A DNA stretch of 64,000 nucleotides from Diadema antillarum (lineage: Eukaryota), in NCBI RefSeq assembly GCF_040938485.1, contig NW_027271066.1, forward strand, positions 868,001-932,000. The letters run 5' to 3'. Position numbers and translations under genes: made by a program. Position 1 is the first letter of the stretch. Every line of letters starts with the position of its first letter. Of this stretch, positions 3,867 through 50,379 are shown piece after piece. The notes beneath the pieces were generated by a model. That model saw nothing but the letters and a program-made list of their open reading frames with translations. It was not told the DNA's origin and ran no database searches.

Positions 3867-4240
3867 ATGATGAGCGGGCCAGAGCAGGGACCTTGTGCCG
3901 CGCCCGTGCCATCAGTGGTGAAAACGGACGTAGCTCCAAAGGAGAGTAGTAACAGTGGGAATGTGTGTGGCAGCAGGCATGGTGTTTCCACTGGTACCCA
4001 GAGCAGTGGCAGCAAGGGTAGTGGCAGCAATGGAAATGGCAGTGGTAACGGCAATGGCAGCGGCAGTGGTGGCAATAGTCGCAGGAGCTCCCTGACTGCC
4101 AGGAAAAGCAGCAGTGGTGGTTGCAGCAGCGGGCGGCATCGGGGAGAGGCGTACATTGAGGGTGACATCAAACTTAGATTTCTCTGTCCAGATGACGTTG
4201 AAGCTGTGAAGGGACTGTGCCGAGAGTGGTTTCCTGTCGA
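3867..4240 (+). CDS. NAA60: NAA60 coding exon 1 (exon begins at acceptor 3795)
   Basis: Acceptor tatttacag|3795. G/S/N-rich N-terminus, then IKLRFLCPDDV...WFPVE. Donor GA|gtaagt, phase 2. Confidence 0.9.
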
Positions 4241-6514: not shown

Positions 6515-9500
6515 TGTATGTGTGTTTGTGTTGTGTGTACAATGTACACTTGTATGTGTGTTCGTATGGGATGACTGGATTATCACTTGATGTGAATATT
6601 CTTTCACTCCTGTTAGCAGTGAGTAAAATTTGTCGTACATGTAGACTGGAAGTGGTACAATCAGACAGTACAGAGATTTCTACCTTAACTTTTATACACT
6701 TTAAAAATTAAGCATTTAAATGACTAGATGTTATGGGTTGGATTTGTCAAGCGCTACTGAGACCATGGAGAAAAACATGAATATGTACAATCATGTGCTT
6801 GTGAGTGGTTTACATAAATTGTAAAACTGCATCCCTCAAATACCCTTTATATCTCCATGACCTTTGATTATAATCAGTCCTCATACGTGTAACAGCAATA
6901 GACCTACAAGCTGTACATGTGTACGTGTATACATACTGTAGTCTACCAAATATGAATTAGCCTCAAGGCAAGTCATAGAAGAAAATTTCTTCTATCATTA
7001 TTATTGGAAGATAATAAAATGGCAAAGGTACCGAATGATTGTTAAACATAAATGATGATACCAATGATGAAACAATCAATACATGTATTGACAATAATAA
7101 AATGATAACAGTGCGTTATTCTAGAGATGCCATGTACTGAAAAACATGAGTAACAAAGTAGACCCTACAAGCACTGAAGATTTGCAATACATGTACATGT
7201 AGGTCTATACAGATGGTTAAAACCAAGGGAACTTGAAAGTGAACAGGAGAATTTGATAGAGATAAAAAACAAACAAACATTTGTTCCATTCAGAAGCTGT
7301 TGTTGCATTGATGCACACACATTTTCTTTACAATCAATTTAAAGGTAAAACTGCAATATGCTCTAAAAGCTTTCATTTTAGCAAATATTTCATCCCAGTA
7401 GACAATACAACTCAAAATACAGCTCAAAGTATAGTGATGTTTCATTGTAAAGTGATTCACATACATGCAAACTGATTCTAAATGTAATCTTCAGCTGTAA
7501 ACAAATGTGTTACATGGCAGGATGAAGTTGATATATATGTACTGACTATAACAAAATGTGAACAGGCCAGTTTTGTATTGAGAAACCTTCATAATTTAAA
7601 TCTGCTCCTGAGGGCCACATGTTAGAAGTTCATCATATACAATAGATAACTATAAAGCATGTTACCCAAACTGTGTGTTGCTGATGGCATTTATCTTGAG
7701 ATGGACACAGTACATGTACGTACATTTATAACTGTACGCACTGTGGAGTACTTCCTTGAATATTCACTTACGAGACACATTCTATGACTGAAATGAAACA
7801 GATTTACTACTCAATTACATGTAGGTACATGTGAAGGTGATGAATGTATAGTTCTTAGACCAGGACAGAAGATGCTACAGGGGTTGCCAGCTTTGACCAT
7901 TTATCATACAGTTGTACCAGGACATTGACGTTTGTGACTTGTGCATGAATTACTAGTAGTGGAGTGTACTATGAGAAGCGAGTGTATGTACAGCATACTG
8001 CCCTGTGAGTCATGATCTTGCAGAACAATAAAGTGCACAGCACCACCTCAAGATAATAGGTCACCTGATTCATGGCATCATCATGTGACTCATTGTATAC
8101 ACTCATTCCCCGACTGTGTGAAATTTAGACTGAGTTCCCATGTTGCAGTCTGAGGAAGTTAGACTGGGAGTTTATAAAAAAAGTATTACCATCCAGTTGC
8201 AATATACACACACATGCATTGTACATACTGTACACCTGTACACTGTACGATAGTTGTTTTCTATTTGTATACAATGTATGCCACACTACAATGTAGCTCT
8301 GTGTAATCAATGCTTGAGATGCCCCTAGCAGCACTTGAGGCAAATGGACTCAGAAATGCATACAGAAAAGACATAGAATGTCTATTCCACTTATTTAGGA
8401 AAATTTCATACAATGTACAATATGTGTTATGAACAACATGATACATGTAATGAACATGTACAGTAGCTTTGTTCTGCACTCCAGTCTATGAGTCCCCCTG
8501 TGACTAGATTACATTTTTCTACCACAATTTCTTAACTATTTTACAGCACCTGAAACGATCAAAAGTGCCTGTTTTAATTATAATTTTTGGTCAAAATTGA
8601 GTAGGAAACATACACGTTTGTATGTAAGTGTACCTTTTACTTGCCAACAAGAAGGCTTTGAGAGAGTCACACACCTAAATGTATCTTGACAAACATACTG
8701 TAACCAATTTTGAACGTACAAATGTATGTTATGTCCAAATTAACTACACTAGTGTTGTGATAATGCATACATGTGCTTGTCCCATTTGATAGATAGATGT
8801 GATATCAGACCGAAATAGCAAAAATTGGTTTACAAATCATATGTATTTTCTATGAATATAAGAGCTGATATCAAAAGGAGTATTGTTTTGTGTCTGCTAT
8901 GAAATGTGAATTGTTTTATATTGTATTCATATTTGTCCACAGATACCCAGACTTCTGGTACAAAGACATCACCAACGACAAACGATTCTTTTCGTTGGCT
9001 GCTGCTGTCAACACAACCATTGTGGGTTTACTGGTGGCTGAGGTTAAGACTAGGGCAAGATGTCATAGAGAGGTAAGACTCCACACTCATTGATTTGAAA
9101 CAGGGAAGTGGTAAGAGACTTCGTGTTTGTATACCATGCATACTGTATACCTAAATACTGGTATGCATTAAAAAAAAAAAAAACTTTGTGGTAAGTCTTT
9201 TTGTTGCTCATACTTTAATTTTTTCCCCTTTGATTATTATTAGTACTTTCATTTTGTAAGATTTATTTTCCCATTACTAGTAATACATATTAATGATGAG
9301 TTTGCTTCTAATACATCCTTTGTATGTCAGTATCATGTTGATGTTGCACTGTATATATGTACTGTAGCTCATGCAGTGCAGCTACAGCTACCGGTAGTCA
9401 ATGTCATTACTCATCCTGGAAGCTTGATGAGATTGCCCACTATACTGTGAGTGACCATCAATGATTGACCATCAGTGATTGACCATTTGGACCCAGAGTG

Positions 9501-26700: not shown

Positions 26701-29700
26701 GCAGTTCACTGTACATTATGTCCCTTTTGATTGAAGCTGATCATCCTCTTTCTTTCCTCTGTATATTTGCTTTCCTGTGACGATGAATTATTTTTACAAT
26801 GTATGTGATCAGCTTTCAAGCTGCATCATGCGATGAACCCTACAATGTAGTACAGCAAATTGTGCTACGCATTCTACATAACTCCACTGCACACTGTCTC
26901 TGTGTTGAGTGCCTAATGTAGCTCACGGCTCTGTTTTTAAATGCAGGACTCCAACATCTTGTCGGCAACCTTTCCAGGGTCCACACAAGTAGCCTATATC
27001 CTGAGCCTTGGAGTGGTGGAGGAATACCGGAGGAGAGGCATAGGTAGGTAATAGCCCAGGCATTCCGCCTAGCTCACAATGAAGGATGTGTACATCGAAG
27101 GAAGGCAGACAGATCCCGTAGATCGCGACCTCTGTGTAACCCCCATGATACAAAACAATGTGTGCATATTATTGTGGACGGAGGAGTAGGGTCGTGTGGC
27201 ATCTTACTGTACATCTTGGTTTAGACTTAAAGGTTGTATCCCTCTTGCAAACATCACAAAATTTTTACAGATTTAAGAATAATGTCTCCTAACATCATGT
27301 ATAAAATCTTTAATACGATGTTAATACACCTCATTTTTTTTATTTGTTTATTTGTTATTATTTTTTTTTGAGAAATTGAAATTGAATCCTATATGTCACT
27401 TGAAATTACAGGGTCCTGGTTTGTGCAGTGAATAACAGTTGGGATATCTTGAAGGTTGGAATAAATTCACTGGAAATTTAAAGTATTTACTCCCCCTCCA
27501 TCATAAAGAAGTTTCAAGTTCATGCTATTATTCTGAGGAAAGGTCTGAATTACATACACTCTACCTTTACAAGATACCATACTATGAAAGAAATCTAATT
27601 TCCAGGGTTGAAAATGGGACACTCAAACTTTGAATGATACAATGGTTTACCTGAAAAAGAAAAAAAGAAGACTTGTGTTCCTCCCAGCAAATGTGATCAA
27701 TTTATTAAAGGGATGGTACGGTATTGGTGGAGATGAGAGTTGGGCTTTTAACTTTTTGCGAGATACTAAGAAAATACTTATGACATAGTACAGAGCATAC
27801 CATCTTAAGAGGAATTCAAAGTTTATTTGATGAAAATCGGGTTTGGAATGAATGAAACATCCAAAAACAAAGTAAAACAAAGCAATCGTAATAAAGTGTG
27901 GGTCCCACACTTTATTAGAATCGCTCTTTTTTGGATATCTCAACCATTTCAAAACCAATTTTCATCAAATAAACGTTGAATTCCTCATGGAATTACATGC
28001 TCTTTCATATTTCATAAGAGGTTTCTCATTATCTCACCAAAAAATGTTAGAAACCTGAAATTAGGTCTCAACCAAAACTGTACGATCCCTTTAACATTTT
28101 CGCAGTAAAAGAAACTTCCATTTTCCTTTTTTTTTTTTTTAAATGATTCTGGGATTTTCTGTGTTGTTGCTCCTTTGTATTATACAGACCTTACAACAAT
28201 AGGCAGCATCTAAAGGGTTTGAGAAGGAAGAAGTATGTCATATTTTCTCTCAGTTTTGGTTGACGAAGGTAGTGTTCGTGTTTGGAGGAAATTACATATA
28301 ATTTCCCACTTGGGAGTGATTTGTTCATTGAACATTTCTCACAGGATGGGATTGCAATGCATATAAAGTCATTAGTGGAGTCAAGTTACCAGTATTAAAT
28401 ATCCCTGGCATGAAATGGAAGTATCATGCATTGATATTAGAGCTGTCTGTTTTTGTTATGAACAAGGTGTAGCATCGAGAATGCATTTTTAAGACTTAAA
28501 TGTAATTTCTGTATTTATGTACAACATTATGTGTGTGCAGAGCATGGCTCTCCTTCATATTCAATGCCAAGATTCAATACTGCTAAAAACTAGTTGCAAT
28601 TATAATATCAGTAAGTGAAAGTGGATTGTATGTGTGTATGCACCTGACCTTGGAGACGTACAAGAGTATCATAATATCTCTAACGAGATGGCAGAGACCA
28701 AGTCTTGTTTTGCATGAGGTTGTCAAACAGTATAACCATCTCATTTTCGTAATGGATAGAATGGGCTTGCTGAATCAAAAGTGGCATCAACAATTTATTT
28801 CATATTAATTTAGGATGACAGTAATGGTAATATTTATCTGTTTCTGCATTTGGCTTCCCTTTTCCCGTCTTACTTTCCTCTTAATTCTGCTGGACAGATT
28901 TTGACCTTTGATTTCAGAGCGTTGCTCAAATAATGCATTTATAAGCAGACTCTCCCTGTGCTGTTGGTAGTGATGGTATAATGGGTCTCCCTCTCTCTCC
29001 CTCTCTCTCTCTCTTCGCCCTTCTCATTCAGTTAAGGTACAACATCTCTGTGGCATATGAAATATACTTCAAACTATTTTTAACCTTTTTGGTTGTGTTT
29101 GGAAAACTGCTCTATGCATACTATGTAGGATTGATTGCTGAATGAATATTTTTAGTTTTGATGATAACCCATTTGTAATTGATGCATATATACTATGTAT
29201 TAGAGAACAAAATATGTTTGTAATTTAATATGACCACTTTTGTTGCTTTTTGTCAACAGAAAATTGCATGATTTTTATCTTATCATATTTTTCTAAGTCT
29301 AAAATTATATCAAACCTATGCTAACTAGTGATGGTCATTAGGTAATTGGATACATTGTACACCTCAAGTGTTACTGTACAGGAGATACACATGAGGTGCA
29401 TGTTGTACGTTGAAGCTAATATCAAACTGCCTATGGAATCGTTAACACAAACAGGGGTTTCACACTGTTAAAAGATTTCGTTTGTGAACTTACATAGACA
29501 CACGTTTCACACTTTAATCAAGTTACTTTTATTTTAAAGCCTGAAAGTAAACTCAAATCATATTCTCTGTATATGTCCATGTAGTCGATATGATGATTTT
29601 TCTGAGGTACTTTGTGCAAAAATGCATATTTGACGTCATTTGTAGCTGTGAAATTTCATTTTTAAGCTGAAACTCATAATTAGTCTGCATTACTTTGATA

Positions 29701-32700: not shown

Positions 32701-35700
32701 ATATGATTTATGTCTGTATAAGATAGCTACAAATAATGTAGCTTTAAATACTTTACCCTCATCAGAGGTTTATTTATTGCCTCTCATCTTTGTTTTCACA
32801 TTCACGAGGAAGAATAATAATAAATCATATGTGGTTTACTGTTGTATTCCCAATCAGTCCCCTCTACCAAAACAAGTATCAAAACAAACAAATTAAAGCA
32901 AAAAGGAATACAGTGTAAAGGAGTAGCATGAGAAGGTCTATAACCATGGGAATGTTAAATATTTTGCAGCATGAAGGACAGACTTGTGAGATGAAGCTGT
33001 ATGTGTGCTCTCCCGAGTCTTTCAGAATGACTTTGCCACACACAGTATGTTATTCATGTGAGGGTGGCCCTGCTATCAACATCATGTTTGTACAGCCCCC
33101 ATTTAGACTGCTCCGTACACTGTGCGATCATTTCCAGAATGTCTCGCAGGCATACCAGGCTGTGAGTGAAGTATTGCAATAGGTGAACCATCAGTCAACT
33201 ACAGTTTCATGTGGTTTGGCAGATGTATACATCCAAGCATATTCGTCTACAGTAGTCTCTCTCAATATTTTAAGGATGTACAGTATGTTTGTGTGTGTGT
33301 GTGTGTGTGCCTTTATGCATGTTTGTCTGTGTGACTGTAGTATTTACTTTTGATTCATCATATCAATGTGTTACTGTAGGTTGATGCCTTCACACAAACC
33401 CTATTGCAGTATTCACGCTTATGGCACTTTTAATACATATAGTTTAAATAGAAATGGTACAGTTTTGGTTGAGGTGGGGCTTCAGGTTTCCAACTTTTTT
33501 TAATGATAATTGTTTAAGATGATGAGAAACCTCATGTGAAATATTACTGGACATATGATTCAAAGAGAATTGAAGTTTACTGAATGAAAATTGGTTTTTG
33601 AAATGGCTGAGAAATCTAAAACAAAAAAATGGGACCCACCTTTTGCTAGGATCCCTTTGTTTTACTTTTTTGTTGTTGATATCCTAGCCTTTTTAAAATC
33701 GATTTTCATCAGATAAACATTAAATTCCGCTTAAAAGTGTGTGCTCTTTAACGTTTCATGAAGTGGTTTTTAAGTATCTTGCAAAAAGTTGAAAGCTGAA
33801 TCCTCACCTCAACCGATACCATACCATTTCTTTGAAAGTGATTTTACTTTCAAGGCACTTGATGCATACTCATTACAGTAGCCAGTATGTGTGCCTGCCT
33901 GTTACAAAATGACTTCTGGGGTATGCCCAAACTACCTAGAACTTCTGTAGTGTTAAATTGGTATGTACTGGCGTGTGATGTTAAGTCCTTGGTTGGTACA
34001 GTTGCCAACCTTAATAAAAGTTAAGAGATGCTGTTATGGAGCGTAGCAACCAAGGGAGGGGGGGGGGGATAGGGGTGGAGGGAGAGATCAACATGACCAA
34101 AAGGTATGGGATGTTGTGTGAAAGGGGGTGTCATCCTTTTACTGTAAGGAGCTTTGACAATTTTACATTTTCAATGTTGCAATCTGGTGCATACTTTCGT
34201 CATGATTTCAACACATGAGAGTCGGTGCACCTGCAAGAAAGTTTGAAACCTTGCGATAATGTTTGGAATATCAGGGATTTGGGACTTTTTTTGTTGGTAC
34301 ATGTAGGCCTATTCATTGTGAGAATTTATTAATCAGAATTAGACAGAATGTGGTGAATTGCTTGAATCTCACGCTGATTGTGTGAGAGTTGGCAGTCCTT
34401 TGTTGTTTTCTGTTTTCATTCAGAAATTTTGTTACTTACATTATTCATAGACTGTAAATCGTAAAAACTTGGATTATTCAAGAGATTGCCTGATCCTATA
34501 CTGCAGATACATTAGGTCTTTATGGACCTAACAGACATGTGTAAGCAAAAGATAAATTGACTTTTTTTTTCTTTCTAGAGTTAGGGGTACATTTTTTTCT
34601 ATGATGTCACTTTGCATGATTCAATAATACCACACTTTGTCACTCTCAAATCTGTACCCATCACAGCTTCAGCCCTCCTGGAGAATTTCCTCGCCTCGCT
34701 GACCTCCCAGACCAGTGGGTCCAGGCCCACAGCCAAGGCTGTCTACCTCCACGTCCTAGCCTCCAACACAGGGGCCATCAGGTTCTATGAGAAGCACAAG
34801 TTCCAGCGGCACGAGTTCCTTCCTTACTACTACTCCATCCATGGCCAGGCTAAAGACGGGCTCTCCTACGTTCTCTACATCAATGGAGGCCAACCACCAT
34901 GGACTCTCATATATCCTTTTGGTTCAGACTTCAAGGATCTGTGCCCAACTGACTCAACTGGTCATACGTGTAGATCACATCAAGTTGTATGCTCTATACA
35001 CTGCATTGTTTTTGCTTTTGGACGTTTAGAATCAGGGATGGCTCAAATCAAATCTAATCAGTGCATGGTTATGTGTAGTAATTCTAAAAACACCAGACCT
35101 TCCATTAAAGAAATAATAATATAATCAGTATAGTAAATAAAAAAAAAAGAAAAATAAGAATTCATGACACTGGCATTTTGTAGTAGTCTTGTATCCACCT
35201 TCACCATAAGAAATAGATACTTCACTATTGATCCTTGAGGCTTTGTACACATTTATTTATGTACATGGCTATCTATTCATCATAATGTCAAGGTCAAATT
35301 GTATATTTTGCTGTTTATTCAATTATTCTCAAATGAAGTTATTTCATTATAATTGTTGCACACGGATGTTGTTTGAATATTTGAACAGACAATTCTTTGA
35401 TTAGCTTTTTGAAAATAAAATGGTGAAGATTAGGCGCCAAGATTGTGATCATTTTGTAAGATTCAAAGTTTCATATAATAATCTGAGATACTTGAGAGGG
35501 TTGAATCACATGTATAATATAAATTGATATGTCATACTACATTTACAGATAGATTGTGACTCTAGGGTTTAAACATCATACAAAATTTTGTTTGTGCAAT
35601 ATTGGTGACAAATTTTCAAGATGCTCCAAGCTTTCTTGAATGGTAAGTTTTAAAAATGGTATTGCTAATCTCAGATTGGAATAAATATCCTTGACTGATC

Positions 35701-36287
35701 AGCTTACAGATTATATGAAGCACTTTGGATCCTACATCTCACGCATACAACCGTGCAATCTGCCTCATGCCATGGCTCGACACACACGCAACTTTTTCGC
35801 CGCCCGCCGCAGTTGGGTGCACCTCCCTCACCTGCCAAACATGCCCAGTATGCCCAACATGCCAAACATTAATATGCCCAACATCACCATGCCCAACATT
35901 CTCTCCCGCATCAGGGGTCAAGGGTCATCCTCTTCATCCTCCGCAGCTGGCCCCTCGGGGTCGTCATCCAATTCGGGGGCGGGAGACTCGTCTGATTCTT
36001 CTTCCTCATCGTCGGCAGAAGCGGTCACGGTGGTGGACGACACACCCAGCGTTGCCTCGTCGCCATCATCGCAGGCTCCGTCTCCAGTGCCGGTGGTCGT
36101 CACGGTTCCCATGACCCCCCACGAGGCTGGGGAGTCGTCGGGATCGAGTCGGCGAAGCTGGCTGCCGAGCATCAATGTGAGCGGCATGAGTCTGTTGACA
36201 CGTTTTGGCGGACAGTGTTACGACAGCGGAGAACAAAACGAACCAGAAGAGCCAGAGGAATATACAAATGCTGACCACTCACTATAA
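3867..36287 (+). CDS. NAA60: N-alpha-acetyltransferase 60 (NatF), join(3867..4240,8943..9072,26947..27043,34667..34910,35708..36287), 1425 nt = 474 aa + stop
   Basis: Spliced translation gives LRFLCPDDVEAVKGLCREWFPVEYPDFWYKDIT...TQVAYILSLGVVEEYRRRGIASALL...KAVYLHVLASN...FLPYYYSIHG...YVLYINGGQPPWTLIDY. This is collinear with the remembered human NAA60 GNAT domain, including the catalytic Tyr (VAYIL) and His (YLHV) equivalents. All splice phases are compatible and the total length is divisible by 3. Confidence 0.95.
4366..4585. mobile_element. MITE family A copy
   Basis: TACTGTATAAGCTGTTATTTT...AAAATAACAGCGTATACAGTA; similar to 39012-39227 and 58888-59086. Confidence 0.85.
4714..4879. mobile_element. 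Harbinger-like MITE with CTG TSD
   Basis: CTG-GGCCCTGTTGC...GCAACGGGCCC-CTG. A related right end lies at ~56985-57006. Confidence 0.7.
5881..6062. mobile_element. G-rich CAG(T)GGCGGATCCAGG MITE with 6-bp TSD
   Basis: CAGGGCGGATCCAGG / CCTGGATCTGCCACTG; TGTATG on both flanks. Confidence 0.8.
6481..6530. repeat. (GT)n microsatellite
   Basis: Direct reading. Others at ~17684-17735, ~33290-33310 and ~54806-54850. Confidence 0.95.
8943..9072 (+). CDS. NAA60: NAA60 coding exon 2
   Basis: gtccacag|A TAC CCA GAC...; YPDFWYKDITNDKRFFSLAAAVNTTIVGLLVAEVKTRARCHRE; |gtaaga, phase 0. Confidence 0.95.
9934..10311 (+). mobile_element. Kolobok-like MITE family B copy (right end clipped)
   Basis: TTAA-AGGGATGGTACAG start; body near-identical to 27709-28090. 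Confidence 0.85.
12050..14960 (-). pseudogene. Tentative decayed adhesion/secretin-family GPCR (7TM_2) relic nested antisense in NAA60 intron 2
   Basis: Fragments in the expected order: TM1-like (TSYSGSGFIFWILI ~14850-14780), TM3-like (SACV...LHL...STFTGFNW ~14680-14600), TM4-like (GYRSPSITTTIC ~14320-14270, after a pyrimidine-rich acceptor) and TM7-like (LAHSLQGFHFLLF ~12562-12525). Stops and frameshifts lie between them. Pattern recognition only. Confidence 0.35.
13555..14202. mobile_element. Harbinger-like CpG-rich MITE (~650 bp)
   Basis: TIR of ~35 bp, AGGCCCGGTCACACTGCCCAAAAGT(T/C)GTGTAAACG, at both ends; flanks TTC/TTA. Confidence 0.85.
15780..15812. repeat. (CAAA)n microsatellite
   Basis: Direct reading. 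Confidence 0.9.
16781..17048 (-). mobile_element. tRNA-derived SINE
   Basis: A-box TGGCGTAGTGG (17035-17025) and B-box GGTTTGATTCC (16992-16982), then a TCCTTGGACAAG...CCCAGGTAAACAGGTACC core and an (ATT)-like tail. Confidence 0.75.
18572..18740. mobile_element. Harbinger-like MITE family D (uninterrupted copy)
   Basis: GGGGTTGTTTCATAAAGCTGTTC / GAACAGCTTTATGAAACACCCC inverted ends. Confidence 0.85.
19265..19349. mobile_element. piggyBac-like mini-MITE (~85 bp)
   Basis: TTAA|CCCGTTGAGGACG...CGTCCTCCACGGG|ATAA. Related copies at 63512-63594 and ~17790-17910. Confidence 0.75.
19396..19595. mobile_element. hAT-like MITE with TCTCCCTGA subterminal repeats
   Basis: About five TCTCCCTGA copies between GAGCTGCCAAG and TGGCAGACCTG. 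A related end lies at ~57160-57259. Confidence 0.55.
21554..21978. mobile_element. Tc1/pogo-like MITE with TA TSD
   Basis: TA|CAGTTGAACCTCTCTTATCCGG...CCGGATACGAGAGGTTCAACTG|TA. Confidence 0.88.
22986..24016 (+). repeat. Tandem satellite of ~190-200 bp units (about 5) built from ~45-50 bp sub-repeats, inside the 3.3 kb element
   Basis: Recurrent AAAACTGATTTCGTT at ~23002, 23191, 23504, 23701 and 23902, plus a recurrent TAACGAACCTTCAGA(A/G)TAA. Confidence 0.85.
24924..25153 (+). mobile_element. Helentron/HINE-like non-autonomous fragment
   Basis: AAAATTTCATC...(ACAA/GACA)n...ACAACCTTTGGCGGAGG. The microsatellite plus GGCGGAGG end resembles DINE/HINE-type elements, from memory. Confidence 0.45.
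26947..27043 (+). CDS. NAA60: NAA60 coding exon 3 (absent from the ORF track)
   Basis: aaatgcag|GAC TCC AAC...; DSNILSATFPGSTQVAYILSLGVVEEYRRRGI; G|gtaggt, phase 1. Contains the GNAT acetyl-CoA motif RRRGIA. Confidence 0.95.
27709..28090 (+). mobile_element. Kolobok-like MITE family B, full copy with TTAA TSD
   Basis: TTAA|AGGGATGGTAC...GTACGATCCCT|TTAA. RR...YY termini and a TTAA TSD are Kolobok hallmarks. Confidence 0.9.
29833..30002. mobile_element. CAGGG-ended MITE with GGACCAGT repeats (copy 1)
   Basis: Ends AGTGTGCAGCCCTG; homologous to 40205-40368. Confidence 0.7.
30396..30776. mobile_element. Bipartite foldback element (two abutting inverted-repeat modules)
   Basis: TATTATGAAATGGGC...GCCCGTTTTATAATA joined to TATAATACAAGTGATGCACAGG...CCTGTGCATCATTTGTATAATA. 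Confidence 0.55.
30801..31369. mobile_element. Kolobok-like foldback MITE family C (long TIRs, TTAA TSD)
   Basis: TTAA|AGGACAAGTTCACCTTCAT...ATGAAGGTGAACTTGTCCT|TTAA; inverted arms of roughly 170 bp. Confidence 0.9.
31802..32527. mobile_element. Harbinger-like MITE (~725 bp)
   Basis: 16-bp TIR TACCCCTTTCATACCA / TGGTATGAAAGGGGTA; flanks TTA/TCA; internal CCACTGTTCA repeats. Confidence 0.8.
33449..33831 (-). mobile_element. Kolobok-like family B, diverged inverted copy
   Basis: Reverse-complement similarity to 27709-28090. Confidence 0.75.
34667..34910 (+). CDS. NAA60: NAA60 coding exon 4
   Basis: catcacag|CT TCA GCC...; ASALLENFL...YLHVLASN...PPWTL(I). Ends at the U12 donor AT|ATATCCTTTT. 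Confidence 0.95.
34911..35707 (+). other. NAA60: U12-type (minor spliceosome) AT-AC intron of NAA60, 797 nt
   Basis: 5' end ATATCCTTTT. Branch site TCCTTGAC at 35688-35695, with the branch A at 35694, 13 nt before the terminal AC at 35706-35707. Splicing restores WTLIDYMKHFGS, matching NAA60 WTILDYIQHLGS. Confidence 0.92.
35708..36287 (+). CDS. NAA60: NAA60 coding exon 5 (membrane-anchor region plus long C-terminal extension)
   Basis: DYMKHFGSYISRIQPCNLPH resembles the human C-terminal amphipathic helices. It is followed by PNM repeats and a Ser-rich tail to TAA at 36285-36287. Confidence 0.9.
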
Positions 36288-39011
36288 TGACCATGTGAGT
36301 GAGGGTCCTCGGAGCAAACAAGGGCTACATCGGCGCAACCATCATGGTATCATGTAGGATCATCAATGTGGTGTAAAGGCTTGTCAGCTTGCCTCATTCT
36401 GAGGTTTTGATGCATGGCAAGTCAATTATCCTTTGGTGGAAAAATGTCAGGTCGCTGTGATGTTAAGGAACCGTGATTTTTTCACATCAGAGTTGGATGA
36501 AGTGCTTCATAGCAGCAGTATGACTTTTGGAGCATTTAAGAGAGATGTGTGTGTGATGATCAGATGCAACATTGGATCCTCTCACACCGGATGACACCAG
36601 GGTTTGGAGAAGACTTGTTCGTCATTGGGAAGAAGCTCTTTGGTCTGAAAACAGACTGAGCAAACATTCTCAACTGCTTGAAGATCGCAAAGTTCACACG
36701 CCCTATCTGTATATTGTATGTCATACCTCATACGCTTTTGATGATGTCTGAATACAGTTTTAGCTCGGAGACATTTTTATAATGATTTTGATGTAACCTG
36801 CACTGTGCAGGCATTTACATTTTCAACATAATATCTTACAGCCATGTGATATCATACATGAATTGATGACAAAAAGGCAAAATATCACATGGTGACAGTG
36901 AGAGTATCAGAAACTGACTGGTGATTTGCTATCCACGCTGTACAGTGTTTGTTCATCATCACGGCAAATTTAATGTTTTTGTGCAATAGAGAAGCAGAGA
37001 TGAGTGATGAAGAAAACATCTCCAATCCCCAACATCACTCGGTAGAACCATACAGTTGGAGCACTGAAAACCTATATTTCTTATCACATAGGCCTAGTTT
37101 GATAATCCAGTAAGCATAGACGTAAGGTGTCTCTAGAGGGATATGTTTGGCACTTAGACCAATGAGGCAGACATACCTGCAGAATGAAATCTAGTGATGA
37201 CTCTTGTATGCCAAAAAATGTACAAATTGAAATATTTTAATGAGTGTGATTTTAGTGATGATGAGATAGAATACAAATTCTGCGTTTTGCAATTTATTTG
37301 TTTGTTTGTCTGTTGGTGTAAGAATAAAAGTGTCAGAGAGGAAACGCCTTTTGGTCCTGGTACAGTGTGGGGTTTGATAATACTCTGCTGTACCTATCCA
37401 TTTGAGCGACTTGTTAAGATTCATTCTCCATACGTATGATACACCATGTGGTGTTATAGAATTTATATGTGTGCTACAGCTCATGTGAGGCACGGTCAGA
37501 AAGGATCGGCAGCCTCAATATCAAATCTGTCAAAGTGAAAAAAAAAACAACAAAAACTTTGCAGTTTATCAAGGGTTCAGTTCAATTTTTGATGTCATTA
37601 TTGCTTTTGTCATGCTAATAATAATGATGATAATGAATAATTGCTTGCTAAGTGCTCAGTTGATTACGGACAAATGGCAGTTAAAAAAACAGAAAGATGC
37701 AAACAGCCTTGGAGCTAGATGGCAATCTGTATCACAAACCAAACACAATTTGTTCCTCTCCCTTTTCTTCTATTACCAGTAACAACCCGTTTCTTTTATG
37801 ATGTCCCTGGCAGGCAATCAAACTGACAATAGTACCAGACGAAAGAAATCCCCTGGGTAGACTCAATGACAATCAAATTTAGAAATATTCTGCCTGTGTC
37901 TGTGTTAAATGGTGTTTATCAGACATTCAGGCATCGTAATGATAGATTCAAACGGAAAGAAATCAGCTCCTGAATGTTTTTTGAAATTGTGACATGTACG
38001 AACTGATCACTCCAGGAGGTACATTGTATCTAGCTATATCTCATTGGCCCATTTGTGCTGTACAAACAAGTGAAGCCGCAGCGCCGCCATGTTACTAGGC
38101 ACACTCTACGGGACTTTGCTGGCATTTTCCAGCAGAGACTGTCGCCAAGATCATGTGATGTCATGAGCTACTGTACAATGTACGCACACAAGTGTATGGG
38201 CGATGTGCTTGGTAAGATGGCGGCACGGTGGCTTCAAAAGGATTGGTCTATGAGATATCTAGGTACTTCCTGTGGATAGACAGTGCGTGTAGGTAGCATT
38301 AAAGGTCAATGCAATGGCCTTGCTTCCTGCCTGGACGAATGACCTCATGGTATCCAAAGCATGTTGGGATGCTGGCAATTTAGAAGGAAATAGAATTGTA
38401 GTCTAATTTTTAGTATATACATTTCTTTGTCAGTAACTCACATGTCAGCAGAAACACAAATATATTGAATACTTAATTCTTTTTTTCTTACTTTCGAAAC
38501 TGCCACTTTTGTAGAATTTGAAGTCGGCTGAACAATGTAATCAAAAGAAAACAAAATGACACAGCAGACAGTATTATCATTATTTTTTTTCCCCATCATA
38601 TGAAGTTGTATTATTTAATGTTATGAAATACTAACTTTTTGTTATCATTAGCAAATCAAGAGCAACAACAAGTAGTTGCATTCCTTTCGTAGCATTTCAG
38701 GATACAAGATTCAAAATGACCAATGTGTGGTACATTCTTGATGCTACATGTACTTGTGTATGTTCTTGCAAGTTGGAAGCTACTTCATGTGTTGTAACTG
38801 GGAATGTGAGGGTAAAGAGTTGCTGAATTAGAGCTCTGTATGGTCTATCAGCCCTTTGTGGCATGGAAGAGATAAAATACTTAATAGTATGTGAAGGTGC
38901 AATGGTAAACTCTAGATTGATTTAGGGCTTCCTGTGTATACATACGTACATTCAGCCATTGACTGAACAAAAAGTGTATACTATGTGAAGCAATACACAT
39001 TCATTGTCATA

Positions 39012-40368: not shown

Positions 40369-41369
40369 CATAATAAAATAATGCATGAAAATACTGTGGT
40401 ATTTTAGATATCGCTGTATGTCACCATTAGAGTGAATGGGCCTATTGCTTATCCTATAGATATCTGTACACTGCCAGTGGATATAGACAATGAAGAGCTT
40501 AGTCTTAAAACAATATGGCCCAATATCACGTGGGACAGTTGTTATGTATTTGATGTGTAGCTTTAAACATGATGACTATAGGAAATGCCTTCTTGCTGAG
40601 CTTAAGTTTAAACAGATGTTACTGATATTACAAAAATACAAAGAAACCAAAGACTCATGTAACAATGACCTGTCACGCATGGCATCAATTGGAACATAGA
40701 TTTTAAAAATTAGAATGAAGATATCAATTTTTTTATAAATAGATTATTGATAATATAACTTTCTTTTTGTAGGTTAATGTGCTGGGAGGGGCCTTTATTG
40801 TATAAAATATTTTGAAGTTGAAAAAATTGAATGTAGAAGGGAGTTTTTACACTGAAGGCATGGAAATGAGAAAATACAACAGTTGGTGGTATATTTTTCA
40901 TAGAGTTGGATTATTTATCAGAGACTGATGGCTGTAACCTGGAAACTCGGTGATCTCGTGGTTCTATTTCATTTGTTTATTGTTTATCTCTTCTATTGTG
41001 TGTTATGTTTTTGACTTGCTCTAAACTTTTTCTTTAACTGTTACCATCCCACTGTACATACTTCATTATTTTTCCACATTTTTCATGGAAGGTGATTTAA
41101 ATCAAACAAATCTGAGCACTGATGTGAAGATAGGGTATCCTTCTCTCATTGTGATTCACATTAAAAAAAAAAGACCCTACAAGCAGATTATTTTACCCTT
41201 TAAGACGCAGCGTCCCCCATGTTACATCATTGTACATACAATATACTATGAAACTTGTACCTTCTTGTGCTAGATTGAATGTGTGCTGTCTATGGTACAT
41301 TTCTGTGCATGGATATTGATGTTGAAGGAGAATTCCAACATGGAGAGGGAGGATGGGGGAGAGCAGACT

Positions 41370-41411
41370 CACATACAAACATACAAACATACAAACATAC
41401 AAACATACAAA
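41370..41411. repeat. (ACATACAA)n microsatellite
   Basis: Direct reading. Confidence 0.9.
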
Positions 41412-42238
41412 CACCACACATTCGTAAAGATGCTCAGTTTGTCCAGATTCATGCAGAGGGACCCCTTTATTCATGCAAATTCTATGACAGCATGCTCAAT
41501 GGGGCATATCTTAAATTCCATCTATGCACACTATTCATTGATTAGATGTCTCACTCAAGGTTGATTGGCAATTTGTGATTTTCATGTACCTCCTTTTATC
41601 TGGTACACTGTACATTCTGACATTGTTCTAACTTCATGATATGTTACACTTGATGAAGACTTTTAGGTGATTATTAGTATTATACAAATCATTTATACAA
41701 GCTCCCTGTTGAAACTATTATGTACTTTGGGATATTTCTACATGTGATATTTCTATTGCTGGTCTATTACAAGGTATCTTTGTGTATTTTTTAATGATTA
41801 TAACTTTGTAATGAATGTTTATTGTCCGTTAATACCACATTATGTGTATCTCCTCAATGTAGATGTCGTGTATAAGCATCTTTAATGCTTCATTTAGTCA
41901 TGTAGGTAGACTTTGTATTACATTGGACAGAATGATCCTGTCTTTTTCTTGAATAACATCAGCAATAAGACTTAAATCCAGGAAGTATTTTACCTTCTTT
42001 AGAATTCTATTTGTAACCACCCAGCTCAAAACCCACACAAAGTCACAGATTAGGCTTCCCTGTAATGGATCAAAATATGTCATTTTATTTTGATCTACTC
42101 ACTTTTTCTTTTTAAGTTTGTCTAACCTGGGAGAGTACTCTTTTCTCTACCTACTGTCAAAAGTTGGCATAAAACAAAACTGAAATCGAGATATTAGCAG
42201 TTGTTCTGGACCATGAGCTGCTTTCATTGGAAATTTAA

Positions 42239-42800
42239 AGGACAAGTTCACCTTCATAGATATGTGGGTTGAGTGTATGCAGCAATATTAGTAGAACACA
42301 TCAGTGAGAGTTTGAGCAAAATCGGACAATTCGTTCAAAAGTTATGAATTTTTGAAGTTCCTGCTCACTCAAGGCTGGATGAGAAGACTAATATAGCTTG
42401 TGATGTCACATGAGTACAACGAGATAAAGAAAGAATAAAGAAAATTCAACATATTTTCACTATTCTTCCATAACAAAAGAACACTTGACTTCTCTCTTTC
42501 AGAAGGCATGGGGAATAATATTACCCTTAACATATTATGTCAGTAACAAGTCGAAGAAATGTGCACTTTATTCAAAAAGTAAAGTTTTGTGAAATTCTCT
42601 TTTTATTTTCTTTATATGGTTGTACGCATATGACATCATACACTGTAGTAGTCTTCTAATCCAGCAGTGACTACGCAGATACTTTAAAAATTCATAACTT
42701 TTGAACGGATCGTCCGATTTTCCCCAAACTTTCACTGATGTGTTCTGCTAATATTGCTGCATTCACTCAATCCACATGTATATGAAGGTGGACTTGTCCT
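42239..42800. mobile_element. Kolobok-like family C copy
   Basis: Same termini and TTAA flanks as 30801-31369. Confidence 0.9.
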
Positions 42801-45800
42801 TTAATGATGCTCCTGCACAGTATGCCAGAGTGACCTGATCTTTATATTGTCTTTTCTCCCTTTTCTGTGAGACTGCACCTCCCAACTCTCCCATATTGAA
42901 ATCATTTTTTTGAAAGGTTGGGATCGTCCAATTTTAACAAGTTATATATCCCTTGAAAAGCATAGAGCTTTAATACCCTTTCGAACTTTGTAGAAATGTG
43001 GAAATTCATTTAGGGCCACGTTTTGTGGGTTTTGAGCTTGGTGGTCACATTTTGTGAGTTGAGTATTGTTTGAAGCAACGGGTGGCACATGCTTTAGCAA
43101 TATGTGTGTTAGGTTAGTTGCTTCTTTATGTCTGTGTGCTAACATTATGCATCATTGAGATGATGTCAATTTATACTTTGTTGTTGTTGAAATGGATATC
43201 AATCAATCACAGGTGGTTTGCCCATTCTGTAGTTTAACAGTGTAAGTAATATACATTGTATTGATAAATGGCATTTGCAAGATTTCAGACTTAGATGTTG
43301 ATATCAGCTGTAACTCATTTTTCTCGTAATACATGTATGCTGTTCTTCGTAGAATCTTATTTATTCATGTTTTTTAGTTGCACATTTTTTTTTTTTCTTG
43401 TGGGTCGCATTTGGCTGACTGAATTGTCAAGAGGTTTATTACACAGAGTTATCTTTATTTTGCTTACATTTGAAAAGTGTAAGTTGCATGTCCTGGGTAC
43501 GTTTTCTTTTTTTCCCCCCTTCTTCTTCCTAGGTAGTGTCAATACACTAATTCAGGCAGGAGCCAATTTGATATTCAAGTAAAACTAAACAGGGCAGCAG
43601 TTTCAGGAGCGTGTGTGACTAGAGCTTGTCAATTTAATCAGTGATTGTCGTGGCTACCAATGCCAGCAGCTGGGAAGCGACCAAACCCTGCTAAGTGCTT
43701 ACAATAGCTGTAACTGTTGCGACTTACTGTAATTGCGAACATCTCCATTGTTTACATTTATTGCTCACTGCAATTATTACAGCTACCTGTGGTGGGGCAG
43801 CAACCAAGAAACAACAAATCTCATTTAAGTGTTTATGTTGCTGTTAAAGTCAAGTGTAACCATAGCAACTGAACTATCACTGCCCGCTTCCTTATGAGAC
43901 AGATCCCTAGACTATCTTGCTCTGCTTTCTTCTTTCATCTCAGGATGCATGGAATTCTTATTGAATGACTTGAATTAATTTGACCTTGTGACAGGAAAAC
44001 ATTGTACATTTGTAGTACCTATTCTTTCAGATTGTCGCAAAGGTGTAACAGCAGGTATCGATGGGTGTATCACGGTCTCATTGAAATTTGCATAATGCAG
44101 TTTACATGTATTGCTTTTTGAAAAGCGTCATGTGTGATATTGAAGAGCATCATATACATGTAACCTCTTCCCATTCTTACTATGTACACTGATTTCTTCA
44201 GTAATTCATATACCTTTTAATACACTGGTGGTGTAGCTCATTATTGCACATCCAAAATATGTAGCTTGTATTTTGATAACATATTTTTGGACAAAACACT
44301 TACAACGAACTCATATCAAAGTAATGCTGTTGCAACACCCTTTTAATCTCACAGATTTCACAAATTTTTATATTTTCTTATGCTAATGATGATCTTGGAT
44401 AAGTCTGTACATTCCATCATTCTACACGAGGCAGACTCTTCTGCACCCTTTCTGTAGCTAATCATCCTGTCAGCACGATCAGGAATTCACACTAACTCAC
44501 AAATTAAACAATCAGCAAAAATAGCCATTTTCATTGCTATGATAAATAATCACTGACGATTGACACAAAATATTTGGGCCAAACATACTCATTTGCTTCT
44601 AACTAATTGTGTTGGACAGACTTGACATATAAACAGGAATATACTTTTGAGAGGAAGGCATTAGGTTGGGTTTATCAATTTTGGCAAATCAGTTCCTTTT
44701 GCAAATGTCACAAAATTTGCATGGTTAAAGAACAACGTCTCCAAGCAATGTGTATGAAATCTTATGATAATACACCTCAGAGTTGAAAAAAAAAAGAGGA
44801 ATGAAAAACTAACTTTTTGTCACTTGAGAATACCCTCCTCTCTTGTTCTGAGAATAGCTATTGAAATTTTATTTTCTTTTTATTCACATGAATTTACTTG
44901 TGGTCTATAGTATTGTCTCCTCCTCCAGCATAAATGCTGTTTGTTTCAAGTTCTGTTTTTCTGAGGGAGGATCTGAATTACCTACCTCTGTATTATACCA
45001 GCTTCTAATAAAAGGAATCTATTCTTCAGGTTTGCAAAAGGGACACAAATTTTGAATGTCTCTTGCACTCAGTAATGTTTCCACCCAAGCATTTTAAATC
45101 CGGGTGAGGACGGTTCTATATTTACCTCTCCTCATAAGGTTACAGTTATGCATTGCTTGATGTTGCAGCAGATTTGTACATGACTGACTTGATGAAAAAA
45201 ACAAAACAAAACCAAAAGAGAAGCTGTTTACTTTTTAGGAAACTGTGTCACTGTGTTAGTGTTATGCTTATCTGTTTATCAAGGGTGATGTCATGTTACT
45301 AATGGAAACTTCTGTCCCCATCACATGTTCTATTTCTGTGATAGAAAGCTAATATTGTTCTAAATGACTTTGTGTGGAGTCTTTTACCAGTTCCTTATGT
45401 AAGTCTTTAGGGGGTATGCTGACAATCAAAGCACTGCCCAGTCCCTCTGATTCAGCAAAATGTTCCTTCAAAACTAAAAAAATACATTTGTATCTTACAT
45501 GTCAAAAGCTTTGAATTCCTAATTTGATTAGCACTTTTTTTTCCAGTTGAGATGCATGTAAACACAGAAATATCTACCACATACAGGCTGTATCTCCTCA
45601 AAATTGTCCTGAATTTAATGTGTAAATGTAACCATCCCAGCAACTATACCATACCTGATGGTTATGTGCTAACATGAGGTCAAATGACCCTCATTTTAGC
45701 CTAGGTATCATAGTACTAGTGTTGAGATGCACATCAAAACTACTTCTTTTTTCCTTTTTGTCAGTTTGAGAAACTGGAACCAGTGTTGTGAGGCTGATAG

Positions 45801-46507
45801 TGTTTGTTCTCAATGCCAACCATGATGAATTTTGGATCTACTGACTTTCCCTCATCCGTGCTGGGATGCTAATCTATGTGTAGGACAAAACCACGTAGTG
45901 GCATCCTGAATGCAGATGGCTGGGCCTTAAAACACTCTTGGTAATTGAAAAACAGCAGGAACCTCCATGTTGGATGGGCGATGCTGGTAATTGAACCATA
46001 ACATCATTGCCAGGGGGTGTGTGGTAAAATTATGAGACTGCAGGTTTATTGCACGTATTCCTTCGACATAAACACTCCCCCCCCCCCCCCAACCTAAATT
46101 TCATTTTCAAAGTAAAACACCAAGTGCATGTCACTACTGATGTAAAAAAAAATATGAAGTCATGAGAATAAGTAGGTAAGAAAGGTAGTGCTTGGCCCCA
46201 GAATTGGACCTAGAAATAAACTATTATTCATTTGTTGTTTTCAAGGTGCCATTCATGAGAATGTTTCAAATTACTGATTCGAATGAGGTTTACGAGTATG
46301 AGAGAGGCATTGTGCATAAAAAATGGTAATTTTTACCATTATTATTTACCAGTTATAGTAGAAAAAAAATTATTACAGTAACAACACGGTAAACTAGATT
46401 TAAAAAGCATCTTATGGCTGTTTTCATTTGCAGTGCTTTCTCGTTGTTGTTGTATTTTCCCCCAAGAGAGAGAACAGTACCAGCATGCATTCATTAAGCT
46501 TGCCCTT

Positions 46508-46993
46508 GGGGTTGTTTCCTAAAGCTGTTCTTAAATATACGCACGACTTAAGAACGACTGGTAATCAGTCCTTGTGCTGAATGATAAGTATAGCACATCA
46601 GAACGTGTTCCAGTTGTTCTTAAAGGGATTGTACAGCTATGGTTGAGACCTAATTTCAGGTTTCTAACATTTTGTGGTGAGATAATGAGAAACCTCTTAT
46701 AAAATGTGAAAGAGCATGTAATTCTATGAGGAATTCAACATTTATTTGATGAAAATTGGTTTTGAAATGGCTGAGATATCAAAAAATCTTGTTTTTTGAT
46801 GTTTCAGTCATTCCAAACCCGATCTTCGTCAACTGAACTTTGAATTCCTCTTAAAATGGTATGTTCTGTACTATATCATAAGTGTTTTCTTGGTATCTCG
46901 CAAAAAGTTAAAAACCCAATTCCCATCTCCACCAAAACTGTACTATCCCTTTAAGTCGTTTGTAACTTAAAGAACAGCTTTATGAAACACCCC
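46508..46993. mobile_element. MITE family D copy interrupted by the Kolobok-like insertion
   Basis: Halves match 18572-18740 and are split at TTAA. Confidence 0.85.
46624..46950 (-). mobile_element. Kolobok-like family B copy nested in another MITE
   Basis: TTAA|AGGGATTGTAC...GTACTATCCCT|TTAA. Confidence 0.9.
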
Positions 46994-47491
46994 AGGCTAC
47001 TGTGAATCATGAAACATCACAGTATTGGGCATGTCGCATTCAGTCTACAGTATATTAAACAGTATTTGGGGAGGAGTGCAACCAATTAAAGACCTCCCTA
47101 CATATGAAGTGGTGGATGGGAGACTAATATCACAGAAATACGGATTCATAGAGAGCTGTTTATTTATAGAGATAGGATGTTTACCCATTAAGATCTTTGA
47201 TTGTATTGATTTTTGCTTGTAATTAGTGTTGGTACCATGTATTGTAGCAGCTCTGCATGGATATAGGACCATTCCCCCACTCTGTTTAATTCTTCCTATT
47301 TCTGTTGAGATTTATGTAGGCCTACATGTATATATGACCCGCCATAATGTCAGTTTGTTTCTCCTGTGCACAGTGAAAGGTCACAGAGAATCCTTATTTT
47401 GGGTCAGAAAAGGCATGAAAAGGTGTGAATTTCCCCCTTTGTCACTACTAGTATGCAATTGCAGTTTCAGTGGGGCTGGTTTTGGTTTGAA

Positions 47492-48038
47492 TACTATATA
47501 CGCTATAATTTTCGCGTACATAAATTTTCGCGAATTGCCGCTGTCACACATTTTCGCGAGTGGTTAAATTCGCGATTGGGGGACCAGATGAAATATGAAG
47601 TGGCAAAGAAAGTGTGAATTTTCAACTTACTAGCAAATAAGAATGATACTAGTTATACTCTGCATTAAAAAAACTTACCAAACTCTGCGAACTAGTAAGT
47701 TAGAATTCAACATTTTTGAAGTGGTTAAGTCCATTGCGCTAGACTTCTGACGAGTGTCCCCTTGCGATAATGGATTGGCTCTCCAGTACAGTATTCGTAA
47801 GTAGACGTGGACGTGTGCGTGCTATATATTATGTACGTAAACAAGCATAGCCAGCACACTGTATGGTCTGTTCGGTAAGCCATGACTTGGTATACTAGTA
47901 CTGAAATGTTCGTATCATCAAGGCAAGGGATTCATTTTAGAAGGTAATATTTTCGCGTGTTGTTAATTTCGCGAATAGCTCCCGACTCGCGAAATTCGCG
48001 AAAATAAAACCCCCGCGAAATATATAGCGTATACAGTA
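47492..48038. mobile_element. MITE family A, longer member (~550 bp)
   Basis: TACTATATACGCTATAATTTTCGCG...CGCGAAATATATAGCGTATACAGTA inverted termini. Confidence 0.8.
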
Positions 48039-48699
48039 TATGTAAGTTGGTACAGAATTGCTAAAATGAGTTATTTGCATGTTATGAACTCGTGATGGTT
48101 TTCAATTAAAGATTCTGCATATTTTCTATAATATTCATTGGTTGTTAGACAATCATCTATCCCTTTTGGCTAGTCTTCTCAACATGGATTCAACACATGA
48201 CCAAAAAAAAAAAAAAGGAAAAAATTTAATGTGTTTATTAAATTTGCATTTCTATCATTCTTGCCTCACAGAAGGGAATGTAAGAATAGTACCCATATCA
48301 CACCTGTGAGCTGGGGTATAGTTGGAATGTTTCCCATTAGGTCAAACATTGTGTAAACTTACAGTGAAAGAAGAGAGCTTTATAAATAAGTAGAAGAAAT
48401 TTTACTCCAGGGTATACTGTTTGTTGTGTTTGTGTAAGCCCTAGGCAGAATGTTGATGTTGGAACTACATACATCAAGTCATGATACTCTCATGTGGTGA
48501 ATCATAGTGTGTAACATGTCTGTCTTCTGCTAGAATTCACTGTTTAAAAGTCTGTTGCAGTGTCTGTTCGAAATCCTTTAAATAATCATTCAGTTTGTTG
48601 AGAAGGAGGAAGATGTAAACTGTGAAGACTGGACAGACTCAATGTTCTTTGGTTCTATCTTCTCAGTCAAATTTGACATATGTTTAAACATCGTCTCTT

Positions 48700-50257: not shown

Positions 50258-50379
50258 CAAATGCTAATTTGTTTGTCTGGTGGCCCTCTTGGGCCACTAA
50301 AATCTTTGGTGGCCCAACACCAATATTTAGTGATCCCGGGCCACCGTTAATGTCTAGCCCTCATCATGGACACCTTTGA

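What the first reader, a model, noticed from the sequence alone, without database searches (positions are those of the whole stretch)
34911..35707. Minor-spliceosome AT-AC intron splits the NAA60 catalytic domain from its Golgi membrane anchor
Seen: AT|ATATCCTTTT donor, TCCTTGAC branch site 13 nt from the AC end, and exact restoration of the conserved PPWTL(I)DY junction. Established: U12 AT-AC introns are rare (well under 1% of introns), slowly spliced and often deeply conserved, and the NAA60 C-terminal helices anchor the enzyme to Golgi membranes. GT-AG-only predictors will mis-annotate this gene, because a decoy CAG lies at 35707-35709. I recall NAA60 being a minor-intron gene in vertebrates but cannot verify that here.
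Basis: partly seen in the sequence, partly recalled or inferred. Interest (0 to 1): 0.7.

Follow-up and report, generated by a model that had tools for sequence, protein, structure and literature searches.

The report
Conserved AT-AC minor intron in NAA60
The last intron of this invertebrate's NAA60 acetyltransferase gene is a genuine minor-spliceosome (U12-type, AT-AC) intron, but it is the same ancient intron found at that codon from corals to fish, in a gene already listed as a minor-intron gene in human and fly, so it is real but ordinary.

Summary
Intron 34911-35707 (+) starts with ATATCCTTT. It has TCCTTGAC at 35688-35695, with the branch A 13 nt from the end, and it ends in AC. Splicing 34910^35708 makes the codon at|a (Ile) and gives PPWTL-I-DYMKHFGS. 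That is collinear with human NAA60 chain 5hgz_A, where exon 4 ends at chain position 191 and exon 5 starts at 193.

The genome encodes full-length U12, U11, U6atac and U4atac snRNAs with the canonical recognition sequences. In eight other animals (Capitella, Aplysia, Argopecten, Priapulus, a tick, amphioxus, a teleost, a coral) the same codon position and phase carries ATATCCTTT and a terminal AC. A TCCTTRAC branch site lies 9-15 nt upstream (CCTTGAC at 19 nt in the tick).

57 of 120 public NAA60 protein models read into this intron (…YPF/YPL).

Papers already name NAA60 as a minor-intron gene in human and Drosophila. No RNA evidence from this species was available. The window is not human.

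The parts
3867..4240 (+). NAA60 coding exon 1 (candidate ATG at 3867; ends in phase 2 before GTAAGT)
   Evidence: tblastn of orthologues hits 4155-4241. Boundary and upstream open frame read. The start codon is inferred only.
8943..9072 (+). NAA60 coding exon 2 (CAG|A ... GAG|GTAAGA)
   Evidence: tblastn 8932-9072; boundaries read.
26947..27043 (+). NAA60 coding exon 3 (GNAT Ac-CoA motif RRRGI-; ends G|GTAGGT, phase 1)
   Evidence: tblastn 26944-27027; Pfam Acetyltransf_1 E=0.0017; boundaries read.
34667..34910 (+). NAA60 coding exon 4, the end of the GNAT domain, ending ...PPWTL + 'at' (phase 2)
   Evidence: phmmer to human NAA60 5hh1_A/5hgz_A, E=4e-24, chain 128-191; translation.
34911..35707 (+). 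U12-type AT-AC intron, 797 nt, the last coding intron
34911..34919 (+). U12 5' splice site ATATCCTTT
   Evidence: Invariant in 8/8 aligned species. TCCTTT complements AAAGGA of the host U6atac and AAAGGG (with G.U) of the U11 5' end.
35688..35695 (+). U12 branch-point sequence TCCTTGAC, branch A at 35694, 13 nt from the 3' end
   Evidence: TCCTT-A-C is invariant in 8/8 species. It pairs with GAGTAAGGA of the host U12 with the A bulged.
35706..35707 (+). Terminal AC of the intron
   Evidence: invariant.
35708..36287 (+). NAA60 last coding exon: 'a' completing Ile, then DYMKHFGS... (amphipathic anchor region), a long Ser/Pro-rich tail, and the stop at 36285-36287
   Evidence: Translation. phmmer to 5hgz_A chain 193-228, E=0.007. 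tblastn 35703-35801. High helical hydrophobic moment over residues 1-15.
34922..34923 (+). Weak in-frame decoy GT donor (TTG|GTTCAG). With AG 35708-35709 it would insert Tyr-Pro-Phe.
   Evidence: Read. Not conserved in the orthologues.
35708..35709 (+). Decoy AG (the CAG at 35707-35709) directly after the true AC end

Best explanation
Window 34911-35707 (+) is the last coding intron of an invertebrate NAA60 (NatF, N-alpha-acetyltransferase 60) gene. It is a U12-type AT-AC intron removed by the minor spliceosome. U11 and then U6atac pair with ATATCCTTT. U12 pairs with TCCTTGAC and bulges A35694. Exon 4 is then joined to exon 5 at 34910^35708, making an Ile codon (at|a) and the junction PPWTL-I-DYMKHFGS. 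That junction lies at the first turn of the amphipathic helix which anchors human NAA60 to Golgi membranes. The intron is orthologous to the NAA60 minor intron of other animals, with the same codon, phase and subtype from cnidarians to vertebrates. Shown here: the sequence signals, collinearity, host snRNA genes and cross-species conservation. Inferred: actual splicing in this species and membrane anchoring of its protein.
For: The signals are at the exact coordinates. Exon 4 matches human NAA60 up to chain residue 191 (E=4e-24) and exon 5 matches from residue 193 (E=0.007), so exactly one residue is left for the split codon. Introns 1-3 of the same gene are ordinary GT-AG introns with pyrimidine-rich acceptors, and the five exons sum to 1425 nt in frame. 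The genome G000 has full-length U12 (120.8 bits), U11 (106.2), U6atac (135.4) and U4atac (94.8), all above Rfam cut-offs. Their recognition sequences complement this intron's donor and branch site. Orthologous loci of Capitella, Aplysia, Argopecten, Priapulus, Branchiostoma, Channa and Desmophyllum each have ATATCCTTT right after PPW-x-x plus 2 nt. Each also has a single TCCTTRAC 9-15 nt before an AC that restores the frame. The tick Amblyomma has the same donor and AC, with CCTTGAC at 19 nt. An intron-less 1320-nt contig assembled from a sequencing run (Logan), 76% identical to exon 4 at the protein level over 74% of it, encodes PPWTLIDY uninterrupted. 45 of 120 database homologues have the collinear junction PPW-x-x-x-D. 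Papers name NAA60 as a minor-intron gene in human (PMC11347168, PMC12332006) and Drosophila (PMC12084885).
Against: There are no RNA-seq or cDNA data from this species, so use of the junction is inferred. A weak in-frame GT-AG alternative exists (34922/35709). The motif pair alone is not above chance at window scale. The match of exon 5 to the human anchor region is weak (E=0.007). The papers I read do not state which NAA60 intron is the minor one, so orthology to the human and fly minor intron rests on the fish locus and on mole read-through models (…LLYPS/YPL) rather than on a cited position.
Confidence: 0.93

Rival explanations
1. The intron is removed by the major spliceosome through the in-frame GT-AG pair, with donor GT at 34922 and acceptor AG at 35708-35709. 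This would give PPWTL-I-Y-P-F-D-Y, a three-residue insertion.
For: The pair is in frame (read). Several public gene models of other species use such solutions (for example carp and snakehead models containing YPF...DY).
Against: The donor TTG|GTTCAG is a poor U2 site and is absent from all orthologues. There is no pyrimidine tract before the AG, because only 12 nt separate it from the branch motif. All 45 collinear homologues, including the intron-less assembled contig, have exactly three residues between PPW and D. Human NAA60 shows no insertion there.
Confidence: 0.03
2. The intron is usually retained. The main product would be an anchor-less protein that reads from exon 4 into the intron and stops at 35122-35124.
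For: The open frame continues 71 codons into the intron (ORF 34612-35124). It is the last coding intron, so a retained transcript would probably escape EJC-dependent decay (inference). Minor introns are known to be spliced slowly (established knowledge).
Against: The downstream anchor-region exon is conserved in sequence and frame across phyla. The perfectly conserved splice signals argue for selection on splicing.
Confidence: 0.02
3. This copy is a silent duplicate or pseudogene, and the functional NAA60 lies elsewhere in the genome.
For: A second copy, 99% identical over exon 4, exists on contig C1025.
Against: Both copies keep open exons and intact splice signals. They differ at only 4 positions across exon 4, the AT-AC intron and the exon 5 coding part (34667-36287), which is the pattern of two haplotypes of one locus. 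The full five-exon model in the window is in frame.
Confidence: 0.02

Closest known systems
Minor (U12-type) intron of human NAA60, listed in the Minor Intron Database; the only minor intron mis-spliced in all human minor-spliceosome-deficiency datasets (PMC11347168); alternative splicing on RNPC3 knockdown (PMC12332006)
   Same: Same gene family, established by PDB matches E=4e-24. Vertebrate homologues carry the U12 donor at this very codon: the Channa locus and mole models reading …LLYPS/YPL.
   Different: The species differs, and the protein here is about twice as long because of low-complexity N- and C-terminal extensions. The cited papers do not give the position of the human intron, and I did not fetch human DNA, so exact positional identity with human is inferred from other vertebrates.
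Drosophila Naa60, a minor-intron-containing gene (PMC12084885)
   Same: The same gene keeps a U12 intron even in a lineage that has few minor introns (the low number is from my own knowledge).
   Different: The position and subtype of the fly intron were not checked here.
Classical AT-AC U12 introns (for example those of NOP2/P120 and voltage-gated sodium channel genes; from my own knowledge)
   Same: ATATCCTTT donor, TCCTTRAC branch site 10-15 nt from the 3' end, no pyrimidine tract, terminal AC.
   Different: None in architecture; only the host gene differs.
U2-type AT-AC introns (rare, spliced by the major spliceosome; from my own knowledge)
   Same: AT and AC termini.
   Different: They lack the extended ATATCCTT donor and the TCCTTRAC branch site, both of which are perfect here.

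Membership tests
U12-type (minor) intron, AT-AC subtype | Extended 5' splice site /ATATCCTT(T) | tested here: met
   ATATCCTTT at 34911-34919; invariant in 8 species.
U12-type (minor) intron, AT-AC subtype | Branch-point sequence TCCTTRAC close to the 3' end (about 10-15 nt) | tested here: met
   TCCTTGAC at 35688-35695, with the branch A 13 nt from the end. Orthologues lie at 9-15 nt and the tick at 19 nt.
U12-type (minor) intron, AT-AC subtype | 3' terminal AC and no pyrimidine tract | tested here: met
   ...GCTTAC| at 35702-35707. Only TGATCAGCTT lies between the branch motif and the terminal AC.
U12-type (minor) intron, AT-AC subtype | Host genome encodes U11, U12, U4atac and U6atac with complementary recognition sequences | tested here: met
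   All four are above Rfam gathering scores in G000. GAGTAAGGA (U12), AAAAAGGGC (U11 5' end) and AAAGGAGAG (U6atac) were read.
U12-type (minor) intron, AT-AC subtype | Splicing restores the reading frame and conserved protein sequence | tested here: met
   Exon 4 ends at chain residue 191 and exon 5 starts at residue 193 of 5hgz_A. 45 homologues share the PPW-x-x-x-D spacing.
U12-type (minor) intron, AT-AC subtype | Removal depends on the minor spliceosome in vivo | not testable with these tools
   No transcript data for this species. The human and fly dependence comes from papers only (PMC11347168, PMC12084885).
NAA60 / NatF N-terminal acetyltransferase | GNAT fold with Ac-CoA motif R/Q-x-x-G-x-G/A, and closest similarity to NAA60 rather than other NATs | tested here: met
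   The best PDB hits are all NAA60 (E=4e-24 against 1e-7 for the next family). RRRGI + A is read across intron 3. The named homologues listed are nearly all annotated NAA60. Pfam Acetyltransf_1 gives weak hits on single exons.
NAA60 / NatF N-terminal acetyltransferase | C-terminal amphipathic helices that anchor the enzyme to Golgi membranes | tested here: inconclusive
   Exon 5 aligns to human chain 193-228 at E=0.007. Hydrophobic residues are kept at the positions of human I190, L191, I194, L197 and L201 (PMC4993997). The helical hydrophobic moment reaches 0.70. Localisation was not tested.

The most novel reading that the evidence does not exclude
The invariant placement of a slowly spliced minor intron as the last coding intron, exactly at the first turn of the membrane-anchoring helix, is itself functional. 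On this reading, minor-spliceosome activity sets the ratio of Golgi-anchored NAA60 to an anchor-less, soluble catalytic domain. The soluble form would come from intron-retained transcripts that stop at 35122-35124 and, having no downstream exon junction, escape nonsense-mediated decay. That would be a switch conserved from cnidarians to vertebrates.
Probability: 0.1. Interest if true: 0.5.

Novelty: already known. Interest (0 to 1): 0.22.

Why it matters
For this genome, it fixes the correct NAA60 gene model (junction 34910^35708) where GT-AG-only predictors would truncate or pad the protein. It also shows that the species has a working set of minor-spliceosome snRNA genes. More generally, the check shows that nearly half (57 of 120) of the public NAA60 protein models examined are wrong at this one intron. 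That is a practical annotation warning rather than new biology. The conservation from coral to fish of position, phase and AT-AC subtype fits what is already known about minor introns and about NAA60 as a minor-intron gene.

Tried and rejected
1. A free scan of the window for any U12 donor plus branch site plus matching terminus within 20 kb found 3 pairs against 4.5 expected in shuffles. Motif co-occurrence alone is therefore not evidence. The two other pairs (41135-60007 on +; about 51522 down to 36451 on -) are taken as chance.

2. I looked in the own genome for a processed, intron-less retrocopy that would record the junction. It found only a second intron-bearing, near-identical copy, which gives no junction evidence and no selection signal.

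3. Pfam on single exons gave only sub-threshold GNAT hits. Identity therefore rests on PDB matches and homologues.

4. AT donor with the AG at 35709: rejected, because it shifts the frame and loses the DYMKHFGS homology.

5. The Owenia locus was withheld by the tool and a beetle protein was not on record. I did not pursue either by other means.

6. The paper PMC10937998 matched 'U12' only through 'U1245', which is irrelevant.

Exons were searched separately by reference and the junction codon was read by eye. No human DNA was fetched, and neither the window nor any fetched locus looks human. The N run near 51.5-51.8 kb was left untouched.

Full report
**Observation.**
- Exon 4 ends ...cca cca tgg act ctc at at 34910.
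- The intron opens with ATATCCTTTT at 34911-34920.
- TCCTTGAC lies at 35688-35695, with the branch adenosine at 35694, 13 nt before the last intron base.
- The intron ends ...CTTAC at 35707. It is directly followed by AG, so a CAG sits at 35707-35709.
- Exon 4 translates to ...YVLYINGGQPPWTL and exon 5 to DYMKHFGSYISRIQPCNLPH....
- The split codon at|a is Ile.

**Is it more than chance?** The donor 9-mer occurs twice in 64 kb against 0.78 expected. The branch motif occurs six times against 3.96 expected. A free scan for any donor, branch site and matching terminus within 20 kb found three pairs, while shuffles gave 4.5 on average. So the motifs alone prove nothing at this scale.

The weight lies in position. 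phmmer against the PDB aligns exon 4 to human NAA60 up to chain residue 191 of 5hgz_A (E=4e-24). Exon 5 aligns from residue 193 (E=0.007). Exactly one residue is left for the split codon, with no insertion or deletion. From base composition I estimate about 1e-9 for a donor 8-mer, a branch motif within a 9-nt window and an AC all falling at these forced positions. That figure is my own arithmetic, not a tool result.

**Gene model.** tblastn with eight homologues returned by the word search maps five coding exons. I read their boundaries.
- Exon 1: 3867-4240, ending GA|GTAAGT.
- Exon 2: 8943-9072, CAG|A ... GAG|GTAAGA.
- Exon 3: 26947-27043, CAG|G ... G|GTAGGT.
- Exon 4: 34667-34910, CACAG|CT.
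- Exon 5: 35708-36287, including the stop.

The exons sum to 1425 nt in frame. Introns 1-3 are ordinary GT-AG introns with pyrimidine-rich acceptors. Only intron 4 is AT-AC. The Ac-CoA motif R-R-R-G-I-A is assembled across intron 3. Exons were searched one by one, by reference.

**Can the host splice it?** The window's genome (G000, 1.75 Gb) carries full-length matches above Rfam's gathering scores to all four minor-specific snRNAs.

| snRNA | Best score (bits) | Copies |
|---|---|---|
| U12 | 120.8 | 3 |
| U11 | 106.2 | 1 |
| U6atac | 135.4 | 4 (two full-length at 134-135 bits, two shorter at about 100) |
| U4atac | 94.8 | 3 |

Their sequences contain the canonical recognition elements.
- U12 has GAGTAAGGA. 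It pairs with TCCTTG(A)CT, leaving A35694 bulged and using one G.U pair.
- U11 starts AAAAAGGGC, which pairs with TCCTTTT of the donor.
- U6atac has AAAGGAGAG, and AAAGGA is the exact complement of TCCTTT.

**Conservation.** I fetched gene loci for named homologues. In Capitella teleta, Aplysia californica, Argopecten irradians, Priapulus caudatus, Branchiostoma belcheri, Channa striata and the coral Desmophyllum pertusum, the only [AG]TATCCTT (U12-donor-like) match in the locus lies directly after PPW-x-x plus two bases, which is the same codon and the same phase 2. The only TCCTTRAC in the following 3.5 kb lies 9-15 nt before an AC that restores the frame into D-Y/C/A....

The alignments show ATATCCTTT, TCCTT-A-C and the terminal AC invariant in all eight sequences. 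The flanking intron sequence and the intron length (86 to 1045 nt) are free to vary. The tick Amblyomma americanum has the same donor and AC, with a slightly degenerate CCTTGAC 19 nt from the end.

A 1320-nt intron-less contig from a sequencing-run assembly (Logan) is 76% identical to exon 4 at the protein level, over 74% of it. It encodes PPWTLIDY without interruption, which is transcript-like evidence for this junction in a relative.

**Annotation consequence.** Of the 120 best homologues:
- 45 have the collinear PPW-x-x-x-D junction.
- 57 continue PPW-x-x-Y-P-F/L. This is the in-frame translation of (n)nATATCCTT, so the gene models read into the intron and then stop or use GT-AG decoys.

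The Capitella, Desmophyllum and Channa models are examples. In this window there is also a specific in-frame decoy: GT at 34922 with AG at 35708-35709 would insert Tyr-Pro-Phe. Its donor (TTG|GTTCAG) is weak, it has no pyrimidine tract, and it is not conserved.

**Protein context.** Human NAA60 residues 190-202 form the amphipathic helix alpha5, with Ile190, Leu191, Ile194, Leu197 and Leu201 on its hydrophobic face. Residues 182-216 are needed for Golgi localisation (PMC4993997). Two C-terminal amphipathic helices mediate peripheral membrane binding (PMC11835485).

The 243-residue PDB chain is offset by one from native numbering. The split codon here therefore corresponds to Leu191, the second residue of alpha5. 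The window's protein keeps hydrophobic residues at all five positions (L, I, M, F, I) and shows a high helical hydrophobic moment just after the junction. So 'catalytic domain | membrane anchor' is a fair description, with the boundary a few residues inside the targeting region. Anchoring in this species is inferred.

**What is known.**
- NAA60 is named as a minor-intron gene in human. Its minor intron was the only one mis-spliced in all human minor-spliceosome-deficiency datasets analysed in PMC11347168.
- It shows alternative splicing on RNPC3 knockdown (PMC12332006).
- Naa60 is among the Drosophila minor-intron genes whose protein drops in a minor-splicing mutant (PMC12084885).

The papers I read do not give the intron's position. 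Positional identity with vertebrates rests on the fish locus and on mole read-through models. Earlier first-stage notes of this scan list other AT-AC introns in the same genome, in a sodium-channel gene and in SLC35B4. That fits a working minor spliceosome, but I did not test those notes.

**Verdict.** This is a real U12-type AT-AC intron (confidence 0.93), orthologous to a deeply conserved and already catalogued minor intron. It is correctly read but not novel, so interest is low.

**Organism.** The organism is an invertebrate animal. The best named matches are spiralians, with Capitella at 65% and gastropods at about 70% over exon 4. It is not human.

Noticed in passing
public NAA60 protein models (P0001-P0120): 57 of 120 models read into the AT-AC intron (signature PPWxxYPF/YPL) and are truncated or padded. 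Named examples are the Capitella teleta, Desmophyllum pertusum, Channa striata, Lymnaea stagnalis, Daphnia and Dermacentor models. This is a systematic annotation error at one conserved minor intron.
   Followed up: partly
window 3867-4150 and 35830-36284 (+): The NAA60 open frames carry long low-complexity extensions. One is a Ser/Gly-rich N-terminus of about 95 aa. The other is a C-terminal tail of about 150 aa with MPN repeats and Ser/Pro-rich sequence. The modelled protein is 474 aa against about 240 aa in the homologues. Whether these parts are really coding, or whether further splicing occurs, is untested.
   Followed up: no
G000:C1025:863399-866638 (L017) versus window 33169-36408: A second copy of the NAA60 3' region exists. 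It has only 4 differences across exon 4, the AT-AC intron and the exon 5 coding part, but about 4% differences in the upstream intron 3 stretch. It is most likely the other haplotype assembled as a separate contig.
   Followed up: partly
window about 51540-51840: A run of N (assembly gap or masked stretch) flanked by very AT-rich simple sequence.
   Followed up: no
window 13514-13522 (-); 41135 (+); about 51522 (-): Other isolated U12-donor-like motifs (ATATCCTTT, GTATCCTTC, ATATCCTTG). Two can be paired with distant branch-like motifs, but shuffles give as many such pairs, so they are probably chance.
   Followed up: partly
L001-L008 (G000 contigs C113, C587, C1276, C1723, C340, C2130, C837, C655): Minor-spliceosome snRNA genes are multi-copy in this genome: three U12, four U6atac (two full-length, two shorter), three U4atac and one U11.
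   Followed up: partly
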